Positions 1,150-23,141 of a stretch of 23,694 nucleotides of DNA are shown here, piece by piece (position 1 is the stretch's first letter; each line of letters starts with the position of its first letter). The notes beneath the pieces are model-generated. The model searched no databases. It saw only the letters and a program-made list of their open reading frames with translations, and was not told where the DNA came from. The stretch spans positions 1 to 23,694 of the IMG/VR virus record IMGVR_UViG_3300005859_000281; one strand, 5' to 3'. The translations under genes and the position numbers were made by a program.

Positions 1150-1218
1150 CAACAGCTGTTTTAGGCGTCTCCAGCTCATCATTTCCAGTCTAACCAGTTG
1201 TGCAGAAAACTTAAATAC
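1150..1218 (+). promoter_or_regulatory. Two-box promoter module copy 1 (CAACAGCTGTTT, CTAACCAGTTG, BRE/TATA TTAAATA)
   Basis: Boxes at 1150-1161 and 1190-1200, TATA 1211-1217, ATG 1243. Confidence 0.75.
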
Positions 1219-1242
1219 CAGCCTTAACAATAGCTAGATACG

Positions 1243-1437
1243 ATGAATCCACAACAAATACTACAGGAAGAAATAATAAAGATGTTAGAGAAGGACTTCA
1301 GTGAACTACAGAAACTAATTGATGAGATTGTGAAAACGAAAGATAACCCTGGTTTTGACAAAAAGAAGTTGGGGGAAGCCCATTTTGCCGTACAAAAAAT
1401 CCAAATGGAACTGTACAGGTTAATTCTCACAATGTGA
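1243..1437 (+). CDS. Small helical/coiled-coil hypothetical protein (64 aa)
   Basis: ORF with its own conserved promoter and a downstream T tract. Confidence 0.75.
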   Translation: MNPQQILQEEIIKMLEKDFSELQKLIDEIVKTKDNPGFDKKKLGEAHFAVQKIQMELYRLILTM

Positions 1438-1475
1438 CCTAAAAGCTAACCCGTTTTTTATTTACTTCTTCTTTC

Positions 1476-1551
1476 AAACGGCTGTTTTAGAGTTTTAGGC
1501 TTCTCCAGCCCTTCGTTTTCCGTCTAACTAGTTGGGTAGAAGATTTAAATA
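1476..1551 (+). promoter_or_regulatory. Two-box promoter module copy 2
   Basis: AAACGGCTGTTT 1476-1487, CTAACTAGTTG 1524-1534, TTTAAATA 1544-1551; spacer visibly homologous to copy 1 (TTTTAGGC.TCTCCAGC). Confidence 0.75.
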
Positions 1552-1583
1552 CCTCGATAACGAATCATATATTGGGAGGGAAT

Positions 1584-1925
1584 ATGAAAAGACAAACAAA
1601 AGACAAAGACGAAAATAGATTGTATTTTTGTTCACTATGCGAGTTTACCGCTACAAGTTACGAAGAATTGGACGTGCATTATTCGTTAGCACATGATGAT
1701 ACGGATCTTTCATATGAATTGGAAGCAATTGTGAATAAGAAAACGAAAAAACAAAAAAGAAAAGACCTCAAAGGGAAAGCTATTGAGCAACTGTCACTGA
1801 TGGTTAAGGGAATTAGTTATAAAAATGAGTATGTCGGATGGTGTGAAACGAGATACGAATTATATAGCGAAAAAATAGGTAACAAATACATTATTGAACT
1901 TGTGCCAGGAATTACAGTTTGTTAA
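1584..1925 (+). CDS. C2H2 zinc-finger protein
   Basis: YFCSLCEFTATSYEELDVHYSLAH = CxxC-x12-HxxxxH, then a basic patch; ATG 1584 follows SD-like GGGAGGG. Confidence 0.8.
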   Translation: MKRQTKDKDENRLYFCSLCEFTATSYEELDVHYSLAHDDTDLSYELEAIVNKKTKKQKRKDLKGKAIEQLSLMVKGISYKNEYVGWCETRYELYSEKIGNKYIIELVPGITVC

Positions 1926-1949
1926 TTATTTATTTTATTTTTCCCTCCT

Positions 1950-2033
1950 AAACAGCTGTTTGAGACCTCCTTTCTTTCCTCCCCACCGCCCGCCCAACCT
2001 CGCTTTCCTAACTGGTTAGACAAAACTTAAATA
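1950..2033 (+). promoter_or_regulatory. Two-box promoter module copy 3
   Basis: AAACAGCTGTTT 1950-1961, CTAACTGGTTAG 2008-2019, TTAAATA 2027-2033. Confidence 0.75.
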
Positions 2034-2064
2034 TCTGGGTTAGCACACATATGATTGACCAAAT

Positions 2065-2628
2065 ATGTCCTCTCCACAACCACAAGTTAAGCAAACAAAT
2101 TCAAATCAAGCAAATAATAATTCATCTACTCAAACAATGTCCTGGGAGACAATATTGAAGACTTCAAGGATTGAGAGGCAACATATTGAATATGCAATAT
2201 CTCATTCTGAGGATGCACCGATGTTGCCTTATGAGTTTGTTTACAGTCAAGTTGATTCGAATATGAAAATTTTTCCCCCTACATCGATCGCTATAAGCGG
2301 GGTAGGGGGAGTAATCGGAGCCATTTTAGCAATGAAGTACGCAAAAGGTAACATAAGATTCATAACGACGAAAGAAGTTATCAATGCTGATGAGAAATCC
2401 CCGTTATTTTTATCGAACTACGCCTTAGAATTACTAAAGAAAAAATACAACGCACAAGTGATTACGTTAGAACTAAACGAATTTGAGAAAATTAAGTTAT
2501 TGTTAAGTCAAGGTGGGGTCTATATTTCTGGATTGCCGTACGAGATCACTATTCAATTTGCACAGTTAGCTGGTTTCGGCAGATTATGGCATTATTCGCC
2601 AATACAGAGAAAGTTCTATGTATTCTAG
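2065..2628 (+). CDS. Hypothetical protein (187 aa) with Q/N/S-rich N-terminus
   Basis: ORF downstream of the conserved promoter. Confidence 0.8.
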   Translation: MSSPQPQVKQTNSNQANNNSSTQTMSWETILKTSRIERQHIEYAISHSEDAPMLPYEFVYSQVDSNMKIFPPTSIAISGVGGVIGAILAMKYAKGNIRFITTKEVINADEKSPLFLSNYALELLKKKYNAQVITLELNEFEKIKLLLSQGGVYISGLPYEITIQFAQLAGFGRLWHYSPIQRKFYVF

Positions 2629-2641
2629 GTGGTGGTGACCA

Positions 2642-3373
2642 ATGAACGATCACCAACAGTTTGAGCCAGAAGTAAAGAAATTCAAATGGTTATTGCAACA
2701 AGGGTATATAACACCTACAGAAATATCGTTTTACAGTAATTTCTACGACATTGAGATGACAAGTACTGTGAATTTTGAAGGAAAGGAAATATTAACACCA
2801 CTAATAATTATAGCAAGACCCAGCAGGTTTAAAAATATCGAAAAGCAATTACCTCAAGCAGAAATTGCAGATCCATACAGCAAAAAATTCCCGCTAATTT
2901 CATTGATAAGTGTCGAAAAGTTCATTAACAGTCTGGTTAATCTGAAAATACCATACTTCTTCTTCTCGTTATTTCTACACGAGTCATACAACGATGCTCC
3001 ATCACAAGTTCACGCACTTTTGCACACACTTTTACAACTAGCAAACAGTTCAAACAAGTATGTCATAAAATATTACAACATTTTAGAAGAACCTCTGCCA
3101 GTAAGCAGTGATTTGCAAAAAATAGTATGCCATTTTAGGAAAATGCTCGGCGAGGATAGTAATTGCGACGATAATGATTGGTGGAAGTATAATCTCTGGG
3201 GCAAAAGTACTACCAATACCAGTGCAATTGACAGAAAAATGATAGAGAAATTAGCATTACAATATAACATATCGCCGATTTGTGTTCACTACGTTTTAGC
3301 ATATAACAAAAACCCGTGTCACCTTTCATCAGATACTGTGGAAAAAATAAAATCAGACCTCTCTTCTTCATAA
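2642..3373 (+). CDS. Hypothetical protein (243 aa)
   Basis: ORF preceded by SD GGTGGTGA; probably co-transcribed with 2065..2628. Confidence 0.85.
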   Translation: MNDHQQFEPEVKKFKWLLQQGYITPTEISFYSNFYDIEMTSTVNFEGKEILTPLIIIARPSRFKNIEKQLPQAEIADPYSKKFPLISLISVEKFINSLVNLKIPYFFFSLFLHESYNDAPSQVHALLHTLLQLANSSNKYVIKYYNILEEPLPVSSDLQKIVCHFRKMLGEDSNCDDNDWWKYNLWGKSTTNTSAIDRKMIEKLALQYNISPICVHYVLAYNKNPCHLSSDTVEKIKSDLSSS

Positions 3374-3382: not shown

Positions 3383-3880
3383 CTATAGGGCATTCGTATT
3401 CTCCTTTTTCTCTCTTTTCTTCTTTATCGTTTTTGCGTCTATCGTCTCTATCCCCTCTTCTTCCAGATATTTTAGCACTGCGTCACTATCATCTATCACT
3501 GTTACCTTATCCTGATCGTATTTTTCCATGAGCTTCCTTATGGCATCCCTCTTAAACTCATGGTCTTTCCTGAAGTCCTTCTCGCCCCTCAGCACGACCT
3601 CGGTGGGCTCTATCCCTATCTCTGACAGCTGTTTGAGAGTATCTTCACGTTGTTTTTCCGAACGTCCGCTAACTACTGCTATCGCTTCTGGTTTTTTCTC
3701 TTCAATTAACTGTTGGACAAACGTGATAACTTCCCGTTTGGGCTTGTCCATGTTCATGAACCTCGGCGATTGGAAGCATTCCCAAAACATACGTTTATTT
3801 CCGTTGGCTAGCTTCTCGCATTCGTTCCACCTGGCAGAAATATCGAAAAGCGTGCCGTCCAAATCTAGGATTAACATCAC
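3383..3880 (-). CDS. HAD-superfamily phosphatase, polynucleotide kinase 3'-phosphatase-like
   Basis: Motif I DLDGTL, motif II SGR, R..D...K, motif IV IDDSD; layout like the T4 Pnkp phosphatase domain. Confidence 0.85.
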   Translation of the reverse strand: MMLILDLDGTLFDISARWNECEKLANGNKRMFWECFQSPRFMNMDKPKREVITFVQQLIEEKKPEAIAVVSGRSEKQREDTLKQLSEIGIEPTEVVLRGEKDFRKDHEFKRDAIRKLMEKYDQDKVTVIDDSDAVLKYLEEEGIETIDAKTIKKKREKKENTNAL

Positions 3881-4481: not shown

Positions 4482-4549
4482 TTAAAAAAGTCGAATTAGT
4501 TCTCAAACATATGTTTAAGAAACGAGATTCGTTTTGGCTTATTTTTAAA
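4482..4549. promoter_or_regulatory. Divergent promoter pair with central palindrome TCTCAAACATATGTTTAAGA
   Basis: TATA boxes 4482-4489 (-) and 4542-4549 (+); palindrome 4501-4520. Confidence 0.7.
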
Positions 4550-5884: not shown

Positions 5885-6402
5885 TGTCTCTCTCATATTT
5901 ACAATCGCTCGTTGGGAAAAACGTGGTATTATTCAACTATCTACGTAATATATTCAAAAATAGAATATACAAAATAGTTGAAAATGGGAATGAATATACT
6001 CTTGAGGTTGATATGGGGATAGCTAGCAGGTTACAGCACAGGATCACGCACCCCGGGATTTACTTTATCACAGACGTAATGATACAAGGTACTAGCTATG
6101 TAATTTTTCTAAAAAAACAAGTCGATCTAAAGAAGTTTGCACTGGTAAGCTCGACAACAACTTCTGAATATTACATTTCCTCGTACCGTAAAATACAGTA
6201 TAAAACCGATGCGGGTGTATTCGACGCTTTAGAATTCGATACGGGAGGGTTTAAGCACCTTACGTTTAACTATAATAACTGTATTATAGCGAAAGTGAAA
6301 AGGGCTGGTCATAAGCGTATTGCGGTATGCTTAGGTGATAGTGTCGTTATACAAGATATAAACAATGTTTCGTGCAGTTGTGAGTGGTTTACGGTTGAAT
6401 GA
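5884..6402 (+). CDS. Hypothetical beta-rich protein (172 aa)
   Basis: ORF with overlapping start/stop at both ends. Confidence 0.8.
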   Translation: MSLSYLQSLVGKNVVLFNYLRNIFKNRIYKIVENGNEYTLEVDMGIASRLQHRITHPGIYFITDVMIQGTSYVIFLKKQVDLKKFALVSSTTTSEYYISSYRKIQYKTDAGVFDALEFDTGGFKHLTFNYNNCIIAKVKRAGHKRIAVCLGDSVVIQDINNVSCSCEWFTVE

Positions 6403-7067
6403 GGTGGTGGATAACGGTATATACTAAAAAAGACGAAGTCCCTTCTGCCGAGCAGTTTCAATTCATCGTGTATAAAGAGGTATGTATGGGGAACAGTAGT
6501 ATGGTGTATCCTACTTTAGCTATAGAGAGGCTGAACACTGTAATGCTTACCTATTACAGCGATGAGATAGAAGAATTGTGGAGGGAATTAGTCCTAAAAA
6601 AATATGAGAATGCCACATCTGAGGACGAGCTAAGGCAGATATTGAAAATCGGTTGTGATATAATGTTCATCGTAATGAATGCATCTGGTGACGATGTTAC
6701 GCCGTTGGTATCGAAGATACTAAATAGCACAAGAAAAAAACATCTGTTTTATGTCAACGAGGAAGGACTTGTCTCTGAAAGTACCTATCTCATAGGCGTA
6801 CTAACAAAATTCGTTAATCCCAACGGGTTTGATGTACTCACTGTGTTGAGCATATTGAAAGACGTACAAATAAGGACGGCTACTATGATTAGCAGTATTA
6901 AAGGCACGTCGCTGTATCAGACACTTGTCAGCGAATTAGCCATAGATGAAAATACTATCGAGAAGAGATGCACGGCAAAGTACTATAGAGAATGCGTAAC
7001 AGAGAAGAAAACACAATTATTGAAAGCATTGCAGTTTATCAGGATGAATATAAATATTCCGCGTTAG
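6399..7067 (+). CDS. Hypothetical protein (222 aa)
   Basis: ORF with ATGA overlap. Confidence 0.8.
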   Translation: MRWWITVYTKKDEVPSAEQFQFIVYKEVCMGNSSMVYPTLAIERLNTVMLTYYSDEIEELWRELVLKKYENATSEDELRQILKIGCDIMFIVMNASGDDVTPLVSKILNSTRKKHLFYVNEEGLVSESTYLIGVLTKFVNPNGFDVLTVLSILKDVQIRTATMISSIKGTSLYQTLVSELAIDENTIEKRCTAKYYRECVTEKKTQLLKALQFIRMNINIPR

Positions 7068-7123: not shown

Positions 7124-7212
7124 AAACAGCTGTTTCAAGACTTTATCCTTCCCTTTATCGCCCTCCATCACGCTACTCATTGCCTAACTGGTTAGGCAGA
7201 AAGCTTAAAATA
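7124..7212 (+). promoter_or_regulatory. Two-box promoter module copy 4
   Basis: AAACAGCTGTTT 7124-7135; inverted repeat TGCCTAAC-TG-GTTAGGCA 7181-7198; TTAAAATA 7205-7212. Confidence 0.75.
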
Positions 7213-7283
7213 CTGATGTTTGGCATAAAAATGTACTGATCAAAAATGCCAAAAGTAAAAGTTAGGTTTGAGGGGTGTGGAAA

Positions 7284-9014: not shown

Positions 9015-9096
9015 TTAGGTGCTCTTTAACAAACAATAAAGGAGAAATTAAACCACAAACAGAACCCTTATTAAATATTAAAACATATGTTTTTGC

Positions 9097-11153: not shown

Positions 11154-11310
11154 ACATTACCTTTTTGATGTTTTTGTTTAAAAAGAAAAGGTGTTTATCC
11201 ATCAACAATAAACCTCAAACAGCTGTTTATGAGAGCGGAATAGGATCTGACTTGCTTGAGCTTGCCTTACCAACAGTCAGCTTTATTTGCCGTAGTTCTA
11301 AGGGTATAAT

Positions 11311-11878: not shown

Positions 11879-12529
11879 AATCACCGAGAAGATTACAGTA
11901 TTCTTTGCGTATATAACTATAGTATTATCGTATATGGACGATTTTACTTCTCCACCATCATGTACCACTATTATGCTTCCATTTATTGGGTAGTATAATG
12001 TCTGTTCTATCAGTGCTGTTCCATTTATTGTGATTTTTCCTTTTTGCACTGTTACATTCCCGTTGTATAGTATCTGCCAACCGTATTCCGATACCCCATA
12101 CGATGAGTTGTATATTACAGTAAAATAAGCATTTATGATCGGATATATCGTCCCTGCAGGGGCGAATCCGCTTATAGATAAGACAGCAGTTTGAGTGTTA
12201 TATAAATATAATGTAATTACATAGGGAGAGTCTTGCGGAATAGCAACAGTAGGATCTGGTGCTGTAACGTTTACTATAACATATTCGTGCGGTTTTATGA
12301 TTATTATGGTTGGGTACCAACGATGGCTATTAATTATAGGCACCAATACATATGTTTTATTGGTAGGGTTTTGTATGCATATCGTTATCACGTTGTACTT
12401 ATTTATTTCTCCTACGTCGTAAAAATCCAATACCTTTGCATGCAATTGCGGGTGATAGAAAAAAATAGAAAACGTGAAAAGAGATGGTATTATAACTGCT
12501 AACATTAGTACGATTTCAAACTTTTCCAT
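11732..12529 (-). CDS. Membrane-anchored/secreted beta-rich probable glycoprotein
   Basis: N-terminal TM; several N-x-S/T sequons (NKT, NVT, NSS, NGT, NGS); likely start ATG 12529 with GGTG SD. Confidence 0.75.
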   Translation of the reverse strand: MEKFEIVLMLAVIIPSLFTFSIFFYHPQLHAKVLDFYDVGEINKYNVITICIQNPTNKTYVLVPIINSHRWYPTIIIIKPHEYVIVNVTAPDPTVAIPQDSPYVITLYLYNTQTAVLSISGFAPAGTIYPIINAYFTVIYNSSYGVSEYGWQILYNGNVTVQKGKITINGTALIEQTLYYPINGSIIVVHDGGEVKSSIYDNTIVIYAKNTVIFSVILTSSPQFSSNYRYLFSLISYFFSYIAFRTFSLFFSPSSSFVSTKLKPR

Positions 12530-13565
12530 CTTGCACCATCCATTCAGCATACTGTAACGCAAAATAAAATGTAAAATACCCCAAATCTCTAAAAGAGAAT
12601 ATCCATATTAACGCGGGAAGACCCCAAGCTAATTCTTTCTTATTATTATATAATAGGATTAATGCGAAAAGAGGCATCTCAAGCACGGTGTACACGAACG
12701 AGGGTATAGGTAACCCGAATGCGGTAAGAAATGAAAACGAAATGCCCTGATGTGCAACCGGTTGTGTAATAGTTATAACGGACGCAAGATATTGCTTTGA
12801 AATGAAGGGTATTGATGAGAGCAGTAACGGTAACGTGAATTCTGTTATCTTTCTAAGTTTTTGCTTTTCAAATTTAATTAGAAGAATAGCTATCAATATT
12901 GCAAACTGCTTTACGTCTGCAGAGATTCCCAGGAGCAGGTATCTGAATCTCTCATTAAATATTGCAAGAAACGCAATAGAATATGCGAAAAGGTTCAGTT
13001 CTTGCCCTGTCGCAAAATCGTACGAAAGTGCAGGAAATAGGAAAAAAGATGCGATGAAAACGTTTTCGCGTCTTTTGATGAAGGAATAGGTAAAAGCTAA
13101 AACAGCTGTTATTACGTCTACTGTTTCAAGGTTATGCAGAATTGCAACACTGATGAACGATAATGGAGGGTAAATATAGACGGACGGTAAAAATGAGTTT
13201 GACGTAGTGCCGGTCACAACGTTATACGGAACGTGATATATGGAAAACGCTTTAGCCATTGAGTAAAGGTACGGATTTTTTCCGTCTAGGAATAAGTGTG
13301 ACGCATATAATATTATTGCTTCTTCATCCGTCAGGATAGGTAATCCCGTCATGATGTTCACTACAGCTGTAATAGTTGCAATAGCAAAAGCCGAAACAAT
13401 GAGTATTCTTTGCCTTACGAAGATAGAGAGCATACCTAGAGCAACAACGAGAAATGCCGTAGGCAATAAATACGGTTTTCCGTCACCTAAAAACGCTGTT
13501 CCTATGCTGATTAAACCTAGCCCTGCCAAAAACCATGATATATTATCTTTCAATTTTTGTTCCAT
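12516..13565 (-). CDS. GT-C fold integral membrane glycosyltransferase (GT87/DUF2029-like)
   Basis: About 10 TM segments; TDE acidic motif, GKNPY, YIYPPL, VKQF. Confidence 0.65.
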   Translation of the reverse strand: MEQKLKDNISWFLAGLGLISIGTAFLGDGKPYLLPTAFLVVALGMLSIFVRQRILIVSAFAIATITAVVNIMTGLPILTDEEAIILYASHLFLDGKNPYLYSMAKAFSIYHVPYNVVTGTTSNSFLPSVYIYPPLSFISVAILHNLETVDVITAVLAFTYSFIKRRENVFIASFFLFPALSYDFATGQELNLFAYSIAFLAIFNERFRYLLLGISADVKQFAILIAILLIKFEKQKLRKITEFTLPLLLSSIPFISKQYLASVITITQPVAHQGISFSFLTAFGLPIPSFVYTVLEMPLFALILLYNNKKELAWGLPALIWIFSFRDLGYFTFYFALQYAEWMVQDGKV

Positions 13566-14261: not shown

Positions 14262-14319
14262 TTTAAAAAGTGGGTTTTGACGTTCAAACAGGTGTTTGAG
14301 GAAACTTTTTAAGTTTCCT
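14262..14319. promoter_or_regulatory. Divergent promoter with TCAAACAGGTGTTTGA palindrome and an inverted repeat around the TATA box
   Basis: Palindrome 14284-14299; AGGAAACTT-TTT-AAGTTTCCT 14299-14319. Confidence 0.7.
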
Positions 14320-16106: not shown

Positions 16107-18467
16107 ATGCAAAGCTTCTTTCATGATAACGAAGATGATGAGAGACAACTGACTGAACTAACAAACACTATTTTTGAAACAGTGGTAAATGAACTTGGAC
16201 ATTTGTCTGATTATCTTTCACTTACACCAGACGTTATGGATAGTTTAAGAGATACTGTATATAAACTTGTCAAGATAGCATCGCAACAAAACAAACTTCT
16301 TTTGCAATTCCCAGCAGTCCTCGCTTATTTCGTTTATAATTTTTTAAAAAATATCGATTTAGATAGGATAAAAGACATAAACGAAAAATTAGACAATATT
16401 CAGCGTCTGATACAACGTAAAAACTTGCAGGGTTTATCATTCAGCACTATCAAACAGCTGTTACAACAAGAATTGCAGGAGAAAAAATTCAGACGCAACA
16501 GACCCAATAAAGCAGAAAAACAAAAAGAAGAGCAGAAACAAAGCGGAAAAGAAGAAAAACAACAAGAACAGCAGAAGCAAGGTGGAAAAAGATCCAACAA
16601 AGTAGAAAAACAACAACAAGAAGGAGAAAAACAAGAAGAGGGAAAAGAAGGGCAGGAAAGTGAAAGCGAAGAGAGCCAAGGACAACAAGGACAGGAATCG
16701 GGAGAAGAAAGCCAGGAGGGTAACGAGCAGGAAAGCGGTGAGGAACAGGGGCAACAAGAAGGTGGAGAAGGAAACCAAGGAGAAGAAACACAACAAGAAG
16801 GACAAGAAGGAGGACAGCAAAGTGAAAGCGAAGGCAACCAAGAGGAGGGAGAAGAAGGGGAGTCACAAGAAGGTGGAGAAGGAGAACAGGGAAACGGAGA
16901 AGAGGGCGAGGAACGGGGAAACGAAAACCAAGGGGAACACGGACAGGAATCAGGAGGAGAAGAAGGGCAACAAAGCAAAAACGAAGGAGAACAGCAAAGT
17001 GGAGAAGAAGGAAACGAAGGAGAACGTGGCAATGCCCAAGAAGGACAGGAATCAGAAGGTGAAAGCGGGAATGAAGAAAGTCAAAGTGGAGAAGAAGGTG
17101 GAGAACAACAACAAGGGCAGGAATCAGAAGTGGAAAGTGAAAACGAAGGAAACGAAGGTCAAAATAGTGAGGGACAAGAAGGTCAAAACGGTGAACAAGG
17201 AGGAGGACAGGGAAACGAAAACGAAGAGAATCAAAGCGGAGAAGAAAGCGGAGAAGGTCAAAATGGCGAACAAGGAGAAGGAAGCGGAATGAACCAGGAG
17301 GGTAACGAGCAGGAAAATGAGGGACAAAGCGGAAATGAAGGGAATGAGGGAGAACAACAAGGAGAAGGGAGTCAAAGTGGAGAAGAAGGTGAGGGACAGG
17401 AATCAGGAGAAGGGCAGGAAAGTGAAAGCGAGGGGAGCCAAAATGGGGAAGGAGAAACCCAAGAAGGTGAAGGAGGAGGACAGCAAAGTGGAGAAGAAGG
17501 CAACCAAGGTCAAAGTGGAGAAGAAGGAGGACAGGAATCAGGAGGAGAAGAAGGGCAACAAAGTGAAAACGAAGATATTATAGAAGACCTCGAAAATAAC
17601 ATAGATGAAGAATCAAAGATTTTAGACGGATTGCAAGAAAGCCTTCAAGAGTCCTTAACAGCTTTATCTATTGGGAAAGGCTCAGGAGGAGGAGTATTAA
17701 AGGATATCAATCCTAGAGTTTTAGAATTATTAGAGAGTGCTAACAGGCTTTTGGCTTTGGCTAACCAAGTTGATTTACAGTACGCTAACAGAGGCGTTAA
17801 AGATCAGGGAGGGGTGATGAGGGGGATAACAACTGGAAATAATGTCAAACATATGTTTAAGAGTCAACTAGTTTTACCGGATGAGATTTTCCTCGAACGG
17901 TATACTAACAGAGCCTTACTGCAAAGGGCGGTAGAAAATGAGGGCGTTGGGGACTTATATTTCATGATAGATAAAAGCGGGTCTATGGGGAATTTTATGC
18001 CGAACGGGTATACTGCGTTTGAAAATGTTTCGGCTGTAGCCTTAGCTTCTGCTATGGAGGCAGAAAAGAACAGTAAGAAGGTGTTTGTACAATACTTCGA
18101 TTCTTCGTCAACCGAGCCTATAGATGTTAACAACGTTTTCGAAGTAGCTCAGACCCAACCCGGAGGAGGAACGGACATGATGGTTGCATTACAAGACTTC
18201 ATGGAATATTATAATAACTATCCCGGGTTAAAGGACGTAAGACAGATCTTCATACTATCTGATTTTGAGACGAACTATGATACTACGCTTTATTATTTCA
18301 AGAACTTTGCAAGAAATAATGGCTTAGTAGTTACGTGCATACATGTATATAATGATGAAGTGCCTGCTCGTATGCAAACCATAATAGACGAAATCTGTGA
18401 TGAATATTATAAATTTAATAATTATGATGCAGGCGAATTATTTTCAGCCGTGTATTCAAAGATTTAG
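16107..18467 (+). CDS. VWA-domain co-chaperone with long E/G/Q-rich linker (ATV p892-like)
   Basis: MIDAS DKSGS...GGGT...ILSD at the C-terminus; directly downstream of the MoxR ATPase. Confidence 0.9.
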   Translation: MQSFFHDNEDDERQLTELTNTIFETVVNELGHLSDYLSLTPDVMDSLRDTVYKLVKIASQQNKLLLQFPAVLAYFVYNFLKNIDLDRIKDINEKLDNIQRLIQRKNLQGLSFSTIKQLLQQELQEKKFRRNRPNKAEKQKEEQKQSGKEEKQQEQQKQGGKRSNKVEKQQQEGEKQEEGKEGQESESEESQGQQGQESGEESQEGNEQESGEEQGQQEGGEGNQGEETQQEGQEGGQQSESEGNQEEGEEGESQEGGEGEQGNGEEGEERGNENQGEHGQESGGEEGQQSKNEGEQQSGEEGNEGERGNAQEGQESEGESGNEESQSGEEGGEQQQGQESEVESENEGNEGQNSEGQEGQNGEQGGGQGNENEENQSGEESGEGQNGEQGEGSGMNQEGNEQENEGQSGNEGNEGEQQGEGSQSGEEGEGQESGEGQESESEGSQNGEGETQEGEGGGQQSGEEGNQGQSGEEGGQESGGEEGQQSENEDIIEDLENNIDEESKILDGLQESLQESLTALSIGKGSGGGVLKDINPRVLELLESANRLLALANQVDLQYANRGVKDQGGVMRGITTGNNVKHMFKSQLVLPDEIFLERYTNRALLQRAVENEGVGDLYFMIDKSGSMGNFMPNGYTAFENVSAVALASAMEAEKNSKKVFVQYFDSSSTEPIDVNNVFEVAQTQPGGGTDMMVALQDFMEYYNNYPGLKDVRQIFILSDFETNYDTTLYYFKNFARNNGLVVTCIHVYNDEVPARMQTIIDEICDEYYKFNNYDAGELFSAVYSKI
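16500..17575 (+). repeat. Intragenic purine-rich imperfect repeats encoding GQESGEE/GEQQ units
   Basis: For example a 35-bp exact repeat at 16941-16975 and 17529-17563. Confidence 0.85.
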
Positions 18468-19353: not shown

Positions 19354-20865
19354 CTGATATGCGAAGTCGTTGCCAGTTCGTTCAAGCCACGCGACGGTGA
19401 CGTTGTGAACGCTGACATATCAAACATACGTTTTGCATACCCACCAAACTGTATCTTCTCGTCTCAGTACACTCAATTCATTCATGTTGATCATCCTTTG
19501 CCGAAGATAAGCCGACTAAGGTTTAAGAGAGAGAATGGGGAAGAAGTGAAGGATGACAATTACGTAGTAATAGATATTGGAGACGACTTCTTAGTTTTAC
19601 CAATAGAAGTTTGGAATAAACTGAAGGAGCTTATATCGACTTATTTGAGTGAAGGAACTTTGCACGGAGGCATCCTATTGTACGGCGTCCCCGGCACCGG
19701 TAAATCATACATTGCTACTAAATTACTTACAAGGATTCTGGGGTTGAAAGCAATTGTTAAGCAACCTACCGATTTCTTGACGAAATACGTCGGTGAACCT
19801 TATCAATTACTAAACGATTTCATAAATAAACAACTATTTTCCAACAAACCTTCCGTCATAGTTTTTGACGAGGGAGAAAGGTTTTTACTAAAAAGAGGTG
19901 GAGGCGGTGAAGCTGAAAAATTGGTAGAGGACAATATGAAGAATATATTATTAGAAAAATTGCAGGAATTTGCGGATTCGCAATATCCTTCGATTCTTGC
20001 ATTAACTACTAACGCTTCAATAAACGATATGGACGACGCAATGCTGAGGAGGTTTCCCTGGAAAATTTATTTTCCTCCTTATTCGCATACCGTTTACGAG
20101 TACATAGCCAGGAAGATAACTACACAAAGAACTTTCAAAATTGAGGACAAGGAATATGATGTACAGAAACTATCGTTTTATGCATCTGCTACAGGCATTT
20201 CTGTAGCTGAGTTCAGGACTATAATACAGACTGGGACTACCTCTTTTCTCAGGTCAAAAAGTAACTTCCCGAGGAGACTTGTGCCATTCGAATTACAAGA
20301 TAAGGAAAGTATTTTAGATATAACGAAATTGCCCCAACTCAGGCGTTTTGATATCAAAAATAAGAACGTAAAAATGTTATGCGAAGGAGCATTATACACC
20401 ATGACTGCAGTAGTAACAAGCTATTTTCTTACGAGTGAGAATAGACCCGTTTACCTTATAGATTTACAAGAGTCCACTTCCTTGAGGTATGGAAGCGACG
20501 ATATCATAACGTTACTCAAGCAGGAAAACAAACCGGTCGGTATAATTCACATGCATGGCAACCTCAACATCAACAAACAGCTGTTAATAGAGCGTCTACT
20601 GGAAGAGGATAACGTTAGTTTTGTGGTAATAACGAGTTTTGATAGTTCATTATTACAAGTACAAACATTGAAGCTTCTACCTAGGATTGATATAACACAA
20701 TTACCTGCAACTGACACAGACATTTTGAAAAAAATATTGTACACGGTAAACACATTTTACGGGCTGAAGTTGGACATGCAAAAAACGATGAATGAACTAC
20801 ATAGAGAAATGGATTTTAGAAAAGCTATGGATGTGTTGGAGAAAATGATCGCCATGACAATCTAA
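19354..20865 (+). CDS. AAA+ ATPase, CDC48/FtsH-like clade (ATV p529-like)
   Basis: Walker A GVPGTGKS, pore loop KYVGE, Walker B VIVFDE, TTN, DDAMLRRF; start either CTG 19354 (good SD) or GTG 19405. Confidence 0.9.
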   Translation: MICEVVASSFKPRDGDVVNADISNIRFAYPPNCIFSSQYTQFIHVDHPLPKISRLRFKRENGEEVKDDNYVVIDIGDDFLVLPIEVWNKLKELISTYLSEGTLHGGILLYGVPGTGKSYIATKLLTRILGLKAIVKQPTDFLTKYVGEPYQLLNDFINKQLFSNKPSVIVFDEGERFLLKRGGGGEAEKLVEDNMKNILLEKLQEFADSQYPSILALTTNASINDMDDAMLRRFPWKIYFPPYSHTVYEYIARKITTQRTFKIEDKEYDVQKLSFYASATGISVAEFRTIIQTGTTSFLRSKSNFPRRLVPFELQDKESILDITKLPQLRRFDIKNKNVKMLCEGALYTMTAVVTSYFLTSENRPVYLIDLQESTSLRYGSDDIITLLKQENKPVGIIHMHGNLNINKQLLIERLLEEDNVSFVVITSFDSSLLQVQTLKLLPRIDITQLPATDTDILKKILYTVNTFYGLKLDMQKTMNELHREMDFRKAMDVLEKMIAMTI

Positions 20866-20949
20866 AAGGGGGATCGAGGTTGCTCTGAAAAGCAGGAAAT
20901 CCTCACCGCGAGGTGGGGATGCCCCGTCCGTAAGGACGGGATAGTTCAT
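20866..20949 (+). mobile_element. IS200/IS605 remnant with right-end hairpins
   Basis: Hairpins ATCCTCACC-GCGA-GGTGGGGAT and CCCGTCC-GTAA-GGACGGG followed by TAGTTCA. Confidence 0.65.
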
Positions 20950-21896
20950 GCATTACCCAATACCTCAGGGAAAGTAGGTATACCGTCCTTCACGTATTTT
21001 ATCATCATATCCGCTACATCCCACCACATGTATTTAGGTCTTATAGGTACCTCACTAACGTCGCAAGTCATGCCTTCGGCGTCGAGGGGTCTATATAAAT
21101 CCGGGTCTATCTCATAAGTACCACCTACTTTCTCCATTACGTACTTCAAAAAGTCTTCCACACTCGCTATAACACCAGTGCAGAGGATATACCTTTTCGG
21201 CTCCTCTCCTTCCATAACTTTATTGAATATCTTCACATATTCTCCCGCGTATCCCCAATCTTTTTCAGCCTTGATATTACCTAATTTCACATGCTCCTTT
21301 TCCACTAAGTTCTTAACTATTTTCATGGTCACAAACTCTTCGCCCCTCAACTCGCTCTCGTGATTAAACGTTACAAAATCATAAACCTTAAGCCCCCATA
21401 CTTTACGGTAATAAGTAGCGATATACATTAATGAAACTTTACTTATTGCGTAAGGTGTAACGGGAGCCAGCGGTGTAGAAAGGGTTTGAGGGCGTTCCAA
21501 CGGGTGACCGAATACCTCACTCGAAGCAGGTAAAAATACTTTAGTCTCAGGCGTATGTTTCCTAACAGCCTCCAATATAGCATAAGCCGAAAGCTCGTTC
21601 ACCTGAGCCGTATAGATGGGGTTATTATAGCTATACGGAACGAAGCTCATAGCACCATAATGATATATCATGTCGGGCTTTAGCTCACGTACTATGTCGA
21701 AGACGTTTTCATATTCTGTAAGGTCAGCATAGACAAATTTAGGAGATACACCAAGAATTTCAATGACAGTCCGCATCTGGTTAGTCAACCCGTCTGCTCT
21801 ATGCCTGGTTAATACATATAACTCATCTCCCTTCTTTATATGAAGGAAGGTAGAAAGACTTGAGTCCTGACCCGCACCTGTAATTAAAACCTTCAT
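20946..21896 (-). CDS. gmd: GDP-mannose 4,6-dehydratase
   Basis: ITGAGQD, ASSEVFG, YAISK (YxxxK), FNHES.LRGEEFVT.KI, LGN...KDWG, YRP. Confidence 0.9.
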   Translation of the reverse strand: MKVLITGAGQDSSLSTFLHIKKGDELYVLTRHRADGLTNQMRTVIEILGVSPKFVYADLTEYENVFDIVRELKPDMIYHYGAMSFVPYSYNNPIYTAQVNELSAYAILEAVRKHTPETKVFLPASSEVFGHPLERPQTLSTPLAPVTPYAISKVSLMYIATYYRKVWGLKVYDFVTFNHESELRGEEFVTMKIVKNLVEKEHVKLGNIKAEKDWGYAGEYVKIFNKVMEGEEPKRYILCTGVIASVEDFLKYVMEKVGGTYEIDPDLYRPLDAEGMTCDVSEVPIRPKYMWWDVADMMIKYVKDGIPTFPEVLGNA

Positions 21897-21973
21897 AAGA
21901 TCATCTTCATGTAAAGATATATAAGCCTTGAGTTAAGAGTACTCTCTACTCTAGAGTACCCAAAAAATTATAA

Positions 21974-22033
21974 ATTTAGGGGTTCCAAGGGGGCGTAAGA
22001 TTCCGACTGACCAATTCTAGGGGAGGAAGCCAG
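21974..22033 (+). mobile_element. Mini IS200/IS605-derived element (fused left and right ends, ~60 bp)
   Basis: TATAA then ATTTAGGGGTTCCAAGGGGGCGTAAG...GGGGAGGAAGCCAG. Confidence 0.6.
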
Positions 22034-22042
22034 CTAAATAAC

Positions 22043-22063
22043 TTTTTAAACAGCTGTTTGAGA
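22043..22063 (+). promoter_or_regulatory. TATA box overlapped by the AAACAGCTGTTTGAGA palindrome
   Basis: TTTTTAAA 22043-22050, palindrome 22048-22059, ATG 22074. Confidence 0.7.
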
Positions 22064-22073
22064 GGTATATATA

Positions 22074-22538
22074 ATGAGTGAAAATAATCGTAATAAGCGT
22101 CTTTCTTCATTCGAGACGTATGCAGAAGCTATAGCGAAAATACTAAACTTAATATATACACTTGACCAACTTTCGCAATATTATGACCTTAACCAACTCT
22201 CTACACAGTACCTTAACCAGCCATTTACTCCTATTTCACCTAAAAAACTTGTAAATTATTTTGGTGTTCAGTACAACAAAATACCAAGCCTAGTTCAGCA
22301 AACACAATACAATCCTGTGGCATTGGTAACGAAGGCAAATCAAATTGCCCAGCAAATTGAACCAGATGTAATAAATTCCCTTGCGTCAATGTACGGCGTC
22401 GAACCAAGTATAGTTAGATCGTTACAAGTATATTTGCAGTTGGCACAGGTTTTACCAAAGGTAGTGAGTAGCCAGACCGTTCAAGTCACCAATAATCAAC
22501 AATATACTGCGTCGCCCTACGTGATGGAAAACTACTGA
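22074..22538 (+). CDS. Hypothetical Q-rich protein (154 aa)
   Basis: ORF with a clear promoter. Confidence 0.8.
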   Translation: MSENNRNKRLSSFETYAEAIAKILNLIYTLDQLSQYYDLNQLSTQYLNQPFTPISPKKLVNYFGVQYNKIPSLVQQTQYNPVALVTKANQIAQQIEPDVINSLASMYGVEPSIVRSLQVYLQLAQVLPKVVSSQTVQVTNNQQYTASPYVMENY

Positions 22539-22583
22539 ACTAACCTACCTCGAGGCTTTCTGCCCCCTTAACCCCCCAGAAAG
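22535..22583 (-). mobile_element. Mini IS200/IS605-derived element (49 bp)
   Basis: CTGAACTA...GAGGCTTTCTGCCCCCTTAACCCCCCAGAAAG followed by TTAAA; homologous to 23059-23113. Confidence 0.7.
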
Positions 22584-22615
22584 TTAAAAATCGTTATAAT
22601 ATCAAGAATCTATTG

Positions 22616-23062
22616 ATGTCGAGATTCTTGGTGTCAAGATTGCTGAAATTTGCCGTGGTCGGGGGGCTAGGCACGTTCGTGAATGAACTAGTATTTTTAT
22701 CTACTACTAAGCTTTTATCCATATCGATATCATTAGCATTAGCAATAGAGCTTTCAATAATATTTAATTTTATACTAAATGATATTTGGACTTTTAAGGA
22801 TAAAAGAGTAGGAAGTTTTATTAAGAGACTACTTAAATTTCATATGTCGTCAGCTAGTGGAGGAATTATTCAGTATATTGTGGTAATTTCCATTATTGTA
22901 ATCATGTTTCATTTTAGTAATGCTTCGGAAATAGTGGCAATATTGTTTTTTACGTCTTATTTAAAACTTCAGTCTTTAGTACTTGGCATAATCAATTTCA
23001 TAGGAATAATTTCTGGGTTCATCGTAAGATTTATAACAAGTATAAAGTTGGTATGGACGTGA
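22616..23062 (+). CDS. gtrA: GtrA-family protein (putative lipid-linked sugar flippase)
   Basis: KFAVVGGLGTFVN...SIIFNFILNDIWTFKD; four TM helices. Confidence 0.88.
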   Translation: MSRFLVSRLLKFAVVGGLGTFVNELVFLSTTKLLSISISLALAIELSIIFNFILNDIWTFKDKRVGSFIKRLLKFHMSSASGGIIQYIVVISIIVIMFHFSNASEIVAILFFTSYLKLQSLVLGIINFIGIISGFIVRFITSIKLVWT

Positions 23063-23113
23063 ACTACCACGCCCTCACGGAGGGGGACTTTCGCCCCCTC
23101 AACCCCCAGAAAT
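23059..23113 (-). mobile_element. Mini IS200/IS605-derived element (55 bp)
   Basis: GTGAACTACCACGCCCTCACGGAGGGGGACTTTCGCCCCCTCAACCCCCAGAAAT followed by TTAAA. Confidence 0.75.
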
Positions 23114-23141
23114 TTAAACATGTAAAACATATGTTTTTATG

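What the first reader, a model, noticed from the sequence alone, without database searches (positions are those of the whole stretch)
1150..23136. Strongly over-represented palindrome AAACA-NN-TGTTT (extended TCTCAAACAGCTGTTTGAGA) across the whole window
Seen: perfect AAACA-NN-TGTTT at 1950, 4505, 6738, 7124, 9081, 11217, 14286, 17847, 22048 and 23125. Near matches occur at 12, 1150, 1476, 3623, 3785, 12346, 13100, 13361, 16452, 19422 and 20575. A rough composition estimate (~37% GC assumed) gives about 0.1 perfect copies by chance. Contexts fall into four classes: between divergent TATA boxes (1150, 4505, 11217, 14286), between TATA and start (9081, 22048, 23125), upstream of the CTAAC box, and inside CDSs. 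An 18-bp identity links 4503-4520 with 17845-17862 inside the VWA gene. Inference: this is the site for a dimeric viral protein, either a master regulator or a genome-organising, partition or packaging signal.
Basis: partly seen in the sequence, partly recalled or inferred. Interest (0 to 1): 0.8.

Follow-up and report, generated by a model that had tools for sequence, protein, structure and literature searches.

The report
Dispersed palindromic protein-binding sites, archaeal virus
A 12-18 bp palindrome (CTCAAACA-NN-TGTTTGAG) is scattered about once per 2 kb through this Sulfolobus tailed-spindle virus genome and its closest relatives, is kept by selection mostly just upstream of genes, and is most likely the docking site of a still unidentified dimeric regulator that controls many viral promoters at once.

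Summary
AAACA-NN-TGTTT occurs 10 times in the window, against 0.1-0.3 expected under dinucleotide, Markov-3 and Markov-5 backgrounds. The window is a partial genome of an SMV4-like Sulfolobus monocaudavirus. The same motif occurs 28-31 times in SMV1, SMV3 and SMV4. Its core, ACAGCTGT, occurs 44 times in ATV and is weakly enriched in ATSV, but not in STSV2. SMV2, a close relative, has only 3 copies.

Between SMV1, SMV3, SMV4 and the window, motif positions are 96-100% identical while flanks are 78-86% identical. In SMV2 they drift almost like the flanks. Site density is about 3.1-3.4 per kb in promoter-bearing spacers, 0.8 per kb in convergent spacers and 0.17 per kb in genes. Of 57 intergenic copies, 22 lie 10-14 nt before the start codon, just after a TATA-like box. 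Copies inside genes still exceed synonymous-codon shuffles 5-12 fold and fill spacing gaps.

Best reading: a dispersed operator array for a dimeric regulator, probably a repressor. The binder is not identified, and no gene in the window fits. A tandem ribbon-helix-helix protein encoded elsewhere in related genomes is only a weak lead. The main rival is an architectural or packaging tag. I found no description of the motif in the papers searched.

The parts
1950..1961 (.). Perfect copy AAACAGCTGTTT. It lies in the spacer between the zinc-finger ORF (1572-1925) and the virion-protein gene (2065-2628), 103 nt before that ATG.
   Evidence: SMV3 has AAACAACTGTTT at the aligned place. SMV4 has a perfect copy upstream of the corresponding virion-protein gene, 111 nt before its ATG.
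4505..4516 (.). Perfect copy AAACATATGTTT in an intergenic spacer. A TATA-like box lies downstream of it (class II geometry).
   Evidence: The site is kept in SMV4 and SMV1, and in SMV3 as AAACATCTGTTT, although the flanks carry indels. Promoter context in relatives is shown.
6738..6749 (.). Perfect copy AAACATCTGTTT inside ORF 6399-7067, in frame 0 (K-H-L-F).
   Evidence: It is identical in SMV1, SMV3 and SMV4. Frame and peptide in relatives are given.
7124..7135 (.). Perfect copy AAACAGCTGTTT in the spacer after ORF 6399-7067 and before ORF 7275-8252.
   Evidence: No relative aligns across this spacer.
9081..9092 (.). Perfect copy AAACATATGTTT, between a TATA-like TTAAATATT and the ATG at 9097 of the tRNA nucleotidyltransferase gene (class I). 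The same spacer also faces the divergent ORF 8315-8986.
   Evidence: The 91%-identical ATSV gene has AAACGTTTGTTT at this place, with two mismatches.
11217..11228 (.). Perfect copy AAACAGCTGTTT in the divergent spacer between 10512-11153 (-) and 11311-11652 (+).
   Evidence: It is kept in SMV4 within a 45-bp island of similarity.
14286..14297 (.). Perfect copy AAACAGGTGTTT in the divergent spacer between 13578-14237 (-) and the MoxR-type ATPase gene 14327-16099 (+). TATA-like boxes lie on both sides.
   Evidence: SMV1 and SMV4 have CTCAAACAGATGTTTGAG here. SMV2 has the decayed form AAACAGCTGTAT.
17847..17858 (.). Perfect copy AAACATATGTTT inside the VWA-domain gene 16107-18467, in frame 0 (K-H-M-F).
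   Evidence: It is kept in SMV1 and SMV4. SMV2 has AAGCATCTGTTC, which keeps K-H-(L)-F but breaks the motif at silent positions.
22048..22059 (.). Perfect copy AAACAGCTGTTT, 14 nt before the ATG at 22074 and just after a TATA-like CTAAATAAC (class I). The spacer is shared with the divergent epimerase-like gene 20946-21896.
   Evidence: It is kept in SMV1, SMV3 and SMV4. SMV2 has AAACACCTCTTT.
23125..23136 (.). Perfect copy AAACATATGTTT, 2-5 nt before the ATG (23139/23142) of the large transmembrane-protein gene and after a TATA-like ATTTAAAC (class I).
   Evidence: It is kept in SMV4 and SMV3 although the flanks diverge. ATV has ACAGCTGT 33 nt before the orthologous gene gp60.
1150..1161 (.). 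One-mismatch copy CAACAGCTGTTT in the divergent spacer between 154-1113 (-) and a small ORF at 1243-1437 (+).
1476..1487 (.). One-mismatch copy AAACGGCTGTTT in the spacer before the zinc-finger ORF.
3623..3634 (.). Two-mismatch copy TGACAGCTGTTT that matches 16 of 18 positions of the extended consensus. It lies inside the polynucleotide kinase-phosphatase gene 3383-3880.
3785..3796 (.). One-mismatch copy AAACATACGTTT inside gene 3383-3880.
   Evidence: The same form occurs in SMV4 and SMV3.
12346..12357 (.). One-mismatch copy ATACATATGTTT inside gene 11732-12562. It is probably weak or not functional.
   Evidence: It is kept only in SMV1 and is degraded in SMV4 and SMV3.
13100..13111 (.). One-mismatch copy AAACAGCTGTTA inside the membrane-protein gene 12516-13565.
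   Evidence: It is identical in SMV1, SMV3 and SMV4.
16452..16463 (.). One-mismatch copy AAACAGCTGTTA inside the VWA gene.
   Evidence: Relatives have AAACAGATGTTA.
19422..19433 (.). One-mismatch copy AAACATACGTTT at the 5' end of the AAA+ ATPase gene 19405-20865.
   Evidence: It is identical in SMV1, SMV3 and SMV4.
19828..19839 (.). Decayed copy AAACAACTATTT inside the ATPase gene (one mismatch in the 10 fixed positions). The orthologous place is a perfect AAACAGCTGTTT in SMV1 and SMV4.
   Evidence: This shows turnover of copies inside genes.
20575..20586 (.). One-mismatch copy AAACAGCTGTTA inside the ATPase gene.
   Evidence: It is identical in SMV1 and SMV4.

Best explanation
The palindrome is the binding site of a sequence-specific protein that binds as a 2-fold symmetric dimer, or as two ribbon-helix-helix modules. 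It has about 30-45 sites per genome in SMV1/3/4-type monocaudaviruses. A shorter core, ACAGCTGT, is shared with ATV and ATSV.

Most copies sit in promoter-bearing spacers. About 40% of intergenic copies lie directly after the TATA-like box and 10-14 nt before the start codon. Sulfolobus mRNAs mostly have very short or no leaders (general knowledge, not tested here). That position therefore corresponds to the stretch between TATA and the transcription start, where a bound protein blocks recruitment of RNA polymerase.

I therefore read the sites as a dispersed operator array. One regulator, probably a repressor and probably virus-encoded, would set the transcription of roughly half of the viral transcription units together. 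Copies inside long genes would act as extra roadblocks or anchor points that keep the array evenly spaced.

Shown here: the enrichment, the selection, the positional geometry, and the loss of constraint in SMV2. Inferred: protein binding, repression, and a viral origin for the binder. Unknown: the identity of the binder. It is not encoded in this window. The tandem-RHH protein of the SMV1 gp50 family is only a weak lead.
For: Enrichment: 10 copies against 0.1-0.3 expected in the window. SMV1, SMV4 and SMV3 have 28, 30 and 31 copies against about 0.3 expected from half-site counts.

Symmetry: the consensus is an 18-bp palindrome with a strict 2-bp spacer.

Purifying selection: 17-20 of about 22 aligned sites are fully kept between SMV1, SMV3 and SMV4, against 2.4-4.8 expected from flank divergence. 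Motif positions are 96-98% identical and flanks 79-85% identical. All aligned window sites are kept in SMV1 and SMV4. Intergenic copies are islands of identity among indels.

Link to promoters: density is 3.1 per kb in divergent spacers, 3.4 in tandem spacers, 0.8 in convergent spacers and 0.165 in genes. Of 57 intergenic copies, 22 lie 10-14 nt before the annotated start codon, with an AT-rich TATA-like box 0-9 nt upstream of the motif.

Accessory nature: SMV2 shares the genes and the TATA words but has only 3 copies. Its orthologous sites have decayed about as fast as their flanks, some by silent changes, and no replacement motif appears.

Apparent gain at an acquired gene: the nucleotidyltransferase promoter carries a perfect copy here, but a two-mismatch version in ATSV.

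Precedent: small RHH regulators of Sulfolobales and their viruses bind between the TATA box and the start codon (aCcr1, PMC9976878). Tandem-RHH chains exist in these viruses (PMC9976892).

The gp50 family has two beta-alpha-alpha units and matches phrog_876, annotated 'transcriptional repressor'. It is present in SMV1, SMV3, SMV4 and ATSV, and in ATV by HMM.
Against: No binder is identified and no binding was tested.

SMV2 has lost the motif but keeps an ordinary orthologue of gp50 (63% identity, not an outlier) and an aCcr1-like RHH. Presence or absence therefore does not point to any predicted DNA-binding protein. The only families shared by SMV1, SMV3 and SMV4 and missing from SMV2 are an acidic protein of unknown fold and a Phd-like antitoxin.

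In ATV the 44 core copies show no fixed distance to start codons. Convergent spacers there are as dense as the others.

Copies inside genes are 5-12 times above synonymous-codon shuffles. They make the spacing more even than chance would (SMV4 p 0.003, ATV 0.015, SMV1 0.04, SMV3 0.38). That pattern suits an architectural array as well as roadblocks.

The published SMV1a time course places virion genes in both early and full-time classes (PMC12199143). I could not map its gene numbers to motif-bearing promoters, and nothing there shows a motif-linked switch.

Transcription start sites were not available. 'Between TATA and start site' is inferred from start codons.
Confidence: 0.5

Rival explanations
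1. Architectural or 'self' tag. The sites would be nucleation or anchor points for a protein that condenses, segregates or packages the viral genome, or that marks it as viral. The promoter location would then be secondary, because spacers tolerate the motif best.
For: Copies inside genes are selected at the DNA level. Observed against synonymous-codon shuffles: SMV1 12 vs 1.8, SMV4 6 vs 0.8, SMV3 5 vs 0.9, ATV 28 vs 2.3.

Spacing is more even than random (CV 0.54-0.71). The copies inside genes fill gaps between intergenic ones.

ATV shows no promoter geometry, and its density is equal in convergent spacers. About one site per 1.4-2 kb over the whole genome resembles known genome-wide tags.
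Against: The sharp 10-14 nt peak before start codons and the fixed order TATA-motif-ATG in the SMVs are not expected for a mere tag. Convergent spacers in the SMVs are 4 times poorer than promoter spacers. SMV2 has the same capsid genes without the motif. No DNA-binding virion protein with a matching distribution was found.
Confidence: 0.22
2. Host factor site. A Sulfolobales transcription factor would bind the motif and the virus would borrow it. The half-sites equal those of the host Ara-box AACATGTT, which is read by XylR.
For: The Ara-box is an 8-bp palindrome with the same AACA/TGTT halves. It acts at Sulfolobales promoters through the HTH activator XylR (PMC7264815). Loss of the motif in SMV2 without loss of any obvious viral DNA-binding gene would fit a change of host.
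Against: The viral motif has a strict 2-bp spacer, and the 0-bp AAACATGTTT form is absent. The shorter Ara-box AACATGTT occurs 0-2 times per genome, no more than in motif-poor viruses.

The Ara-box lies upstream of BRE/TATA as an activator site, unlike the class I copies. SMV2 and STSV2, also recorded from Sulfolobus, lack the motif.

Among the first 120 metagenome contigs with the 18-mer, 81 carry bicaudavirus-like genes and hold 179 copies between them. The other 39 carry single copies, mostly at 45-72% GC. The host chromosome itself could not be scanned.
Confidence: 0.12
3. Transcript-end or RNA-level signal. The site would act as a bidirectional terminator, or as a hairpin in the 5' leader.
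For: In ATV the core is flanked by A-runs upstream and T-runs downstream. Several copies there sit a few nt after stop codons or in convergent spacers.
Against: In the SMVs only 2 of 20 convergent spacers carry a copy. The T-run is only 3-5 long. Folded on itself, the 12-mer leaves room for only a stem of about 4 bp around a 4-nt loop (reasoned from the sequence, not computed), which should not hold at 75-85 C. Class I copies lie downstream of a TATA box and upstream of the start codon.
Confidence: 0.05
4. Nuclease- or immunity-related signal. The motif would be a Chi-like or methylation-type mark that shields viral DNA from a host nuclease or from CRISPR spacer uptake.
For: The cores CAGCTG and CATATG are typical type II restriction-modification target shapes. 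SMV1 is reported not to yield CRISPR spacers (PMC12199143). STSV2, which lacks the motif, is reported to yield them; that second point is from my own knowledge and was not checked here.
Against: Restriction targets are usually avoided in viral genomes, not enriched. SMV1 and SMV4 carry no annotated methyltransferase. The promoter geometry is left unexplained. The spacer-uptake link rests on two viruses only.
Confidence: 0.04

Closest known systems
Stoperators of mycobacteriophage L5 and other cluster A phages, bound by the gp71 immunity repressor
   Same: Some 20-35 copies of one 12-13 bp site are dispersed through a genome of about 50 kb, mostly in short spacers. They are read by one repressor that silences the whole genome. 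The site sets differ between related phages.
   Different: Stoperators are asymmetric and oriented with transcription, are read by an HTH repressor, and belong to bacterial viruses. The present sites are palindromic, many lie between TATA and the start codon, and about a quarter (SMVs) to two thirds (ATV) lie inside genes. The binder is unknown.
aCcr1-box of Sulfolobales and their viruses (PMC9976878, PMC9976892)
   Same: A short motif lies between the TATA box and the start codon and is bound by a small RHH repressor. Homologues are encoded by ATV and SMV3.
   Different: The sequence is different (AGTATTA-type). It acts on host cell-division genes. The aCcr1 homologue is also present in SMV2, which lacks the palindrome.
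Operators of the RHH regulators SSV1 F55 and SIRV1 SvtR (from my own knowledge; not checked here)
   Same: These are virus-encoded RHH proteins of Sulfolobus viruses that bind at core promoters and repress them.
   Different: They have a handful of sites at a few promoters, and F55's are direct repeats. They are not a conserved palindrome present 30-45 times, including inside genes.
Ara-box AACATGTT, read by XylR, in Sulfolobales (PMC7264815)
   Same: It is palindromic, has identical half-sites and is promoter-linked in the same host order.
   Different: The spacer is 0 bp rather than 2 bp. It lies upstream of BRE/TATA as an activator site and belongs to a small host sugar regulon.
Genome-wide palindromic or tag sequences in bacteria: Noc and SlmA binding sites, matS, uptake sequences and Chi (from my own knowledge)
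   Same: Tens to thousands of copies of one short sequence are spread over a replicon, in genes as well as spacers. One protein reads them for organisation or for self-recognition.
   Different: None of these shows a fixed position relative to the core promoter. No such system is known for an archaeal virus.

Membership tests
Dispersed operator ('stoperator'-type) array of a viral repressor | Twenty or more copies of one site spread over the whole viral genome | tested here: met
   There are 28-31 perfect copies in SMV1, SMV3 and SMV4, and 10 in the 23.7-kb window. Counting the cores ACAGCTGT and ACATATGT gives 34-43 per genome.
Dispersed operator ('stoperator'-type) array of a viral repressor | Sites lie mainly in spacers next to transcription units | tested here: met
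   62 of 85 copies lie in spacers, which make up about 13% of the DNA. Density is 3.1-3.4 per kb in promoter spacers against 0.165 per kb in genes.
Dispersed operator ('stoperator'-type) array of a viral repressor | Asymmetric site with an orientation bias relative to transcription | tested here: not met
   The site is a palindrome, so it has no orientation.
Dispersed operator ('stoperator'-type) array of a viral repressor | Bound by a repressor encoded in the same genome, and binding silences transcription | not testable with these tools
   No binding or expression data are available. The candidate gp50 family does not track the motif in SMV2.
RHH-protein operator (Arc, CopG, aCcr1 type) | Two subsites about one helical turn apart on one face of the DNA | tested here: inconclusive
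   The half-sites CTCAAACA and TGTTTGAG have centres 8-10 bp apart. This is compatible with two RHH modules, but equally with an HTH dimer.
RHH-protein operator (Arc, CopG, aCcr1 type) | An RHH protein whose presence tracks the motif across genomes | tested here: not met
   The tandem-RHH gp50 family is present in SMV1, SMV3, SMV4, ATSV and ATV, but also in the motif-poor SMV2. Single-RHH aCcr1 homologues are also in SMV2 and STSV2.
aCcr1-box | Sequence of the AGTATTA / A(T/G)G(A)TA(G)A(T/G)TACN type | tested here: not met
   The motif sequence is different.
Ara-box (XylR site) | AACATGTT, with no spacer between the half-sites | tested here: not met
   AAACA-N0-TGTTT occurs 0 times in every genome, and AACATGTT 0-2 times. 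The spacer is strictly 2 bp.
Mobile repeat (MITE or REP-like) or duplicated promoter cassette | Similarity extends beyond the core into the flanks of the copies | tested here: not met
   Base frequencies return to background beyond 3 bp on each side. One exception is a duplicated stretch of about 100 bp upstream of two SMV4 genes.
Intrinsic or oligo-T terminator | Location at the 3' ends of genes, with a T-run of five or more | tested here: not met
   In the SMVs 2 of 20 convergent spacers carry a copy, and the T-run is 3-5 long. ATV is less clear.
Centromere (parS-like) site | Copies clustered near partition genes | tested here: not met
   Copies are spread evenly, with a largest gap of 3.8-5 kb in SMV1, SMV4 and ATV.
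Known RNA family | A match to an Rfam model | tested here: not met
   There is no Rfam match at gathering score, and no tRNA, in the window.

The most novel reading that the evidence does not exclude
The palindrome may not be an ordinary operator. It may be an evenly spaced genome-wide identity array, read by a virus-specific DNA-coating or bridging protein. That protein would mark SMV/ATV-type DNA as 'self' for condensation and packaging into the spindle, or would shield it from host nucleases and CRISPR spacer uptake. Shutting promoters while bound would be a side effect. This would be the first Chi-, uptake-sequence- or Noc-like genome tag in an archaeal virus. It could explain why SMV1 is reported not to yield CRISPR spacers.
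Probability: 0.13. Interest if true: 0.85.

Novelty: new variant of a known kind. Interest (0 to 1): 0.6.

Why it matters
Gene control in the large tailed spindle viruses of Sulfolobales is almost unknown. Most of their genes have no assigned function, and no genome-wide cis-element turned up for them in the papers I could search.

This motif is a single, sharply defined 18-bp site that touches about half of the promoters of SMV1, SMV3, SMV4 and this virus. A related core runs through ATV. A close relative, SMV2, has let it decay. Together these give a direct experimental handle.

- One oligonucleotide can be used to fish out the binder.
- SMV1 can be grown in S. islandicus laboratory strains, and a public RNA-seq time course already exists.
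- The SMV1/SMV2 pair offers a natural comparison with and without the motif.

If the array is a silencing system, it would bear on how these viruses persist chronically without killing the host, and on exclusion between related viruses. If it is an identity or packaging tag, it would be a new kind of signal for archaeal viruses.

The 18-mer is also a practical marker. In the metagenome scan, two thirds of the first 120 contigs that carried it had bicaudavirus-like genes.

Tried and rejected
1. Tandem-RHH gp50 as the binder, argued from presence and absence. I first concluded that SMV2 lacks it. That was an artefact of fetching only bases 1-50000 of a 50918-bp record. The last 918 bp encode clear orthologues of gp50 and gp51. 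The argument was withdrawn and gp50 is kept only as a weak lead.

2. Window-encoded candidates (zinc finger at 1572-1925, virion proteins at 2065-3373, others). None is present in all motif-rich genomes and absent from SMV2.

3. The acidic gp01/gp02 family, one of two families missing from SMV2. The AlphaFold model has pLDDT 73 and finds no significant PDB match. The protein has pI 4.3-5. Weak, non-significant resemblance to DNA-mimic proteins and to a PUR repeat makes it unlikely as a reader of double-stranded DNA.

4. AlphaFold model of gp50. Confidence is low (pLDDT 62) and Foldseek finds nothing significant. Only the secondary structure (beta-alpha-alpha twice) and the Pfam and PHROG matches are used.

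5. Identity with the aCcr1-box or the Ara-box: rejected.

6. A replacement motif in SMV2: none was found among palindromes or among promoter 6-mers.

The single genome-contig scan, run with the epimerase-like protein, returned one unrelated archaeal contig. No host chromosome was therefore scanned.

8. Wider relatives. Scans of viral contigs with the AAA+ ATPase found only known bicaudaviruses and close SMV-like contigs. The gp50 family has only 13 representatives among 1.8 billion proteins.

9. Literature. There were no archaeal hits for AAACAGCTGTTT or ACAGCTGT. The SMV papers read do not describe the palindrome. No supplementary expression table was held.

Full report
WHAT THE WINDOW IS

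The window is the whole of IMG/VR contig IMGVR_UViG_3300005859_000281. It is a partial genome of a large tailed spindle virus of Sulfolobales (Bicaudaviridae). Where it aligns, it is about 88% identical to Sulfolobus monocaudavirus SMV4, 89% to SMV1 and 81% to SMV3.

Recognisable genes include:
- two virion proteins (2065-3373);
- a polynucleotide kinase-phosphatase (3383-3880);
- a tRNA nucleotidyltransferase that is 91% identical in DNA to the ATSV gene (9097-10455);
- a MoxR-type ATPase (14327-16099) and its VWA partner (16107-18467);
- a conserved AAA+ ATPase (19405-20865);
- an epimerase/dehydratase-like gene (20946-21896).

The window has no tRNA and no Rfam match.

THE OBSERVATION

Chance gives 0.11 copies under dinucleotide shuffles and 0.08-0.33 under Markov-1 to Markov-5 models. 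With one mismatch allowed there are 19 sites against 2.0 expected.

Among all 5-mer dyads with spacers of 0-8 bp, this one stands alone. The spacer is strictly 2 bp. The centre is GC or TA in 8 of 10 copies, so most copies are full 12-bp palindromes.

Over 99 copies from four genomes the consensus extends three more bases on each side, to CTCAAACA-KM-TGTTTGAG. Beyond that it falls to background, so the copies are not pieces of a longer repeat. The 18-bp identity between 4503-4520 and 17845-17862 is exact.

THE MOTIF BELONGS TO A VIRUS LINEAGE, NOT TO THIS WINDOW ALONE

Copy numbers across relatives:

| Genome | AAACA-NN-TGTTT copies | Note on the core ACAGCTGT |
|---|---|---|
| SMV1 | 28 | top enriched palindromic 8-mer |
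| SMV4 | 30 | top enriched palindromic 8-mer |
| SMV3 | 31 | top enriched palindromic 8-mer |
| ATV | 0 | 44 copies in the genome (33 in the first 50 kb against 1.1 expected) |
| ATSV | 2 | 9 copies against 0.7 expected, mostly as ATCACAGCTGTGAT |
| STSV2 | 0 | none |
| STSV1 (20-kb locus) | 0 | none |
| SMV2 | 3 | 6 copies against 0.8 expected |

About 0.3 copies per genome are expected from half-site counts in the SMVs. SMV2 is the key contrast. Its genes are mostly 60-90% identical in protein to those of SMV1.

In a metagenome scan for the 18-mer, 81 of the first 120 contigs carried bicaudavirus-like genes. Those held 179 copies, or 0.55 per kb. The other 39 had a single copy each and mostly 45-72% GC, as expected for chance hits.

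THE SITES ARE UNDER SELECTION

At aligned places between SMV1, SMV3, SMV4 and the window, the ten fixed motif positions are 96-100% identical, while the 240 flanking bases are 78-86% identical. Between SMV1, SMV3 and SMV4, 17-20 of about 22 aligned sites are fully kept. If they drifted like their flanks, 2.4-4.8 would be kept. In diverged spacers the motif is an island of identity among indels, for example at 4505, 14286 and 23125.

Against SMV2 the motif positions are 78-84% identical and the flanks 73-76%. Only 2-3 of 12-14 sites are kept, against about 1 expected. One example lies in the VWA gene. AAA CAT ATG TTT here corresponds to AAG CAT CTG TTC in SMV2. The peptide is kept, but the motif is broken at silent positions.

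Copies inside genes are also selected at the DNA level:

| Genome | Motif counted | Observed inside genes | Synonymous-codon shuffle mean |
|---|---|---|---|
| SMV1 | AAACA-NN-TGTTT | 12 | 1.8 |
| SMV4 | AAACA-NN-TGTTT | 6 | 0.8 |
| SMV3 | AAACA-NN-TGTTT | 5 | 0.9 |
| ATV | ACAGCTGT | 28 | 2.3 |

These copies use all three reading frames but favour frame 0, which reads K-Q/H-L/M-F.

WHERE THE SITES LIE

In SMV1, SMV3 and SMV4 together, the densities are as follows:

| Compartment | Copies per kb |
|---|---|
| Divergent spacers | 3.1 |
| Tandem spacers | 3.4 |
| Convergent spacers | 0.8 |
| Genes | 0.165 |

About 46% of the promoter-bearing spacers hold a copy.

The distance from the end of the motif to the next start codon has a sharp peak. 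In 22 of 57 intergenic copies it is 10-14 nt. In nearly all of these an AT-rich TATA-like box ends 0-9 nt upstream of the motif. In the window, the copies at 9081, 22048 and 23125 are of this class I type.

Sulfolobus mRNAs mostly have very short or no leaders, and the TATA box is centred about 26 nt before the start site. Both points are general knowledge, not tested here. On that basis, class I copies occupy roughly -20 to -5.

The remaining intergenic copies are class II. They lie 0-30 nt or more upstream of a TATA-like box, often between divergent promoters. In the window these include 4505, 11217 and 14286.

ATV differs. Its 16 intergenic copies show no fixed distance to start codons, and its convergent spacers are as dense as the others.

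Spacing is more even than random (CV 0.54-0.71 against 0.95), except in SMV3. Re-dealing only the in-gene copies within coding DNA makes the spacing less even than observed. The fraction of re-deals at least as even as observed was 0.04 for SMV1, 0.003 for SMV4, 0.015 for ATV and 0.38 for SMV3. The three SMV values are not independent, because many of their sites are orthologous.

WHO READS THE MOTIF

No gene in the window is present in SMV1, SMV3 and SMV4 and absent from SMV2.

Across whole genomes, only two families are shared by SMV1, SMV3 and SMV4 and missing from SMV2. Both also occur in ATSV.
- An acidic paralogous family, SMV1 gp01/gp02. It has pI 4.3-5, its model has pLDDT 73, and it has no significant structural match.
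- The Phd-like antitoxin gp44, which PMC11065993 shows to neutralise a host Doc toxin.

The most plausible DNA binder by fold is SMV1 gp50, with SMV4 gp67, SMV3 gp86 and ATSV gp35. ATV gp28 joins the family by HMM at E 2.5e-10. It is a chain of about 106 residues with two ribbon-helix-helix units. It matches Pfam RHH_1 and PHROG 876, annotated 'transcriptional repressor'. The model shows beta-alpha-alpha twice but with low confidence, and Foldseek finds nothing significant.

I first thought SMV2 lacked gp50, which was wrong. The gene lies in the last 918 bp of the SMV2 record, which my first fetch had cut off. Its divergence there is ordinary. So gp50 fits by fold and by precedent, but not by distribution. 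For example, the Q that precedes the second strand's SVK in SMV1, SMV3 and SMV4 is T in SMV2. That idea is speculation.

The aCcr1-type single RHH proteins recognise a different sequence and are also present in SMV2.

HOW IT MOST LIKELY WORKS

A 2-fold symmetric 18-bp site with a rigid spacer, held by selection, is best explained as the site of a dimeric DNA-binding protein. The class I geometry places it where archaeal repressors block polymerase recruitment.

The motif is accessory, because SMV2 runs the same promoters without it. One site type occurs at about half of the transcription units. I therefore favour a dispersed operator array that lets one regulator, probably a repressor, tune or silence most of the genome at once. 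The nearest known analogue is the stoperator system of mycobacteriophage L5 (my own knowledge). I give this reading a confidence of about 0.5.

The even spacing, the selected in-gene copies and the ATV pattern keep an architectural, packaging or identity-tag role alive, at about 0.2. The two roles are not mutually exclusive.

A borrowed host factor is less likely, at about 0.1. The Ara-box of Sulfolobales has the same half-sites but no spacer, and it lies at a different place in the promoter. Terminator, RNA-level and nuclease-shield readings are weak.

NOVELTY

Full-text searches found no archaeal paper that contains AAACAGCTGTTT or ACAGCTGT. The SMV1, aCcr1, anti-defence-gene and SMV1a papers do not describe the palindrome. 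The anti-defence paper reports conserved regulatory sequences around some SMV promoters without naming this element.

The kind of element is known: a regulator site repeated through a viral genome. The symmetry, the strict promoter geometry, the selected in-gene copies, the core shared with ATV and ATSV, and the clean loss in SMV2 together make it a new variant worth bench work.

LIMITS

- No binding, expression or start-site data were available.
- The host chromosome was not scanned.
- Gene starts are annotations, not mapped starts.
- Counts from SMV1, SMV3, SMV4 and the window are not independent, because many sites are orthologous.

Noticed in passing
window 9057-10457: The tRNA nucleotidyltransferase (CCA-adding type) gene is 91% identical in DNA to the ATSV gene and is absent from SMV1-4. 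This points to recent exchange between distant bicaudavirus lineages. In this genome its promoter carries a perfect motif copy, whereas in ATSV the corresponding copy has two mismatches.
   Followed up: partly
window 20946-21896 (-): This ORF is a GDP-mannose 4,6-dehydratase / NAD-dependent epimerase-like gene (Pfam E 3e-61). SMV1-4 have no counterpart, and it finds only a weak match in STSV2 (E 8e-05), which has an annotated nucleotide-sugar epimerase. It is probably an acquired glycan-modification gene.
   Followed up: partly
window 16509-16802 and 17469-17532: The VWA-domain gene contains purine-rich, low-complexity tandem repeats with periods of 15-39 bp. They account for the extreme GC and AT skew of the 16-18 kb stretch.
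   Followed up: partly
window 23154-23183: An exact 15-bp tandem duplication (GTGAGAGTTAACAGA, two copies) lies just inside the 5' end of the large transmembrane-protein gene.
   Followed up: no
window 1572-1925: This small ORF has weak C2H2 zinc-finger matches and is shared only with SMV3. ATV gp28 combines a tandem RHH with a C2H2 finger in one chain.
   Followed up: partly
SMV2 (NC_029020; L087, L095, L022): SMV2 keeps nearly all core genes of SMV1, SMV3 and SMV4 but has let the palindrome decay almost neutrally. The only families it lacks are the acidic gp01/gp02 family and the Phd-like antitoxin gp44.
   Followed up: yes
99 sites in window, SMV1, SMV3, SMV4 (counts): The two central bases are correlated. 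GC (42 sites) and TA (32) far outnumber the mixed centres GA and TC (18). Independent half-sites would give about 45% mixed centres. Either the centre is read as one step, or shared descent inflates the count.
   Followed up: partly
L001 9135 and 10768 (SMV4): Two SMV4 genes (gp53 and gp50) have nearly identical upstream regions of about 100 bp that include the motif. This is a duplicated promoter cassette, and may be one of the conserved regulatory sequences reported for anti-defence genes in PMC11065993.
   Followed up: no
L061, L092, L093 (SMV-like contigs): The acidic gp01 family occurs as single-unit and as two-unit proteins, with a conserved C-terminal NNMLQNY. Foldseek gives only non-significant hits, among them DNA-mimic proteins and a PUR repeat. 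It may be an anti-defence protein.
   Followed up: partly
ATSV L007 997-11987 and L006 183, 45521: ATSV carries its own longer palindrome, ATCACAGCTGTGAT (CACAGCTGTG occurs 7 times against 0.02 expected), built on the same ACAGCTGT core. Most copies lie within one region of about 11 kb.
   Followed up: partly
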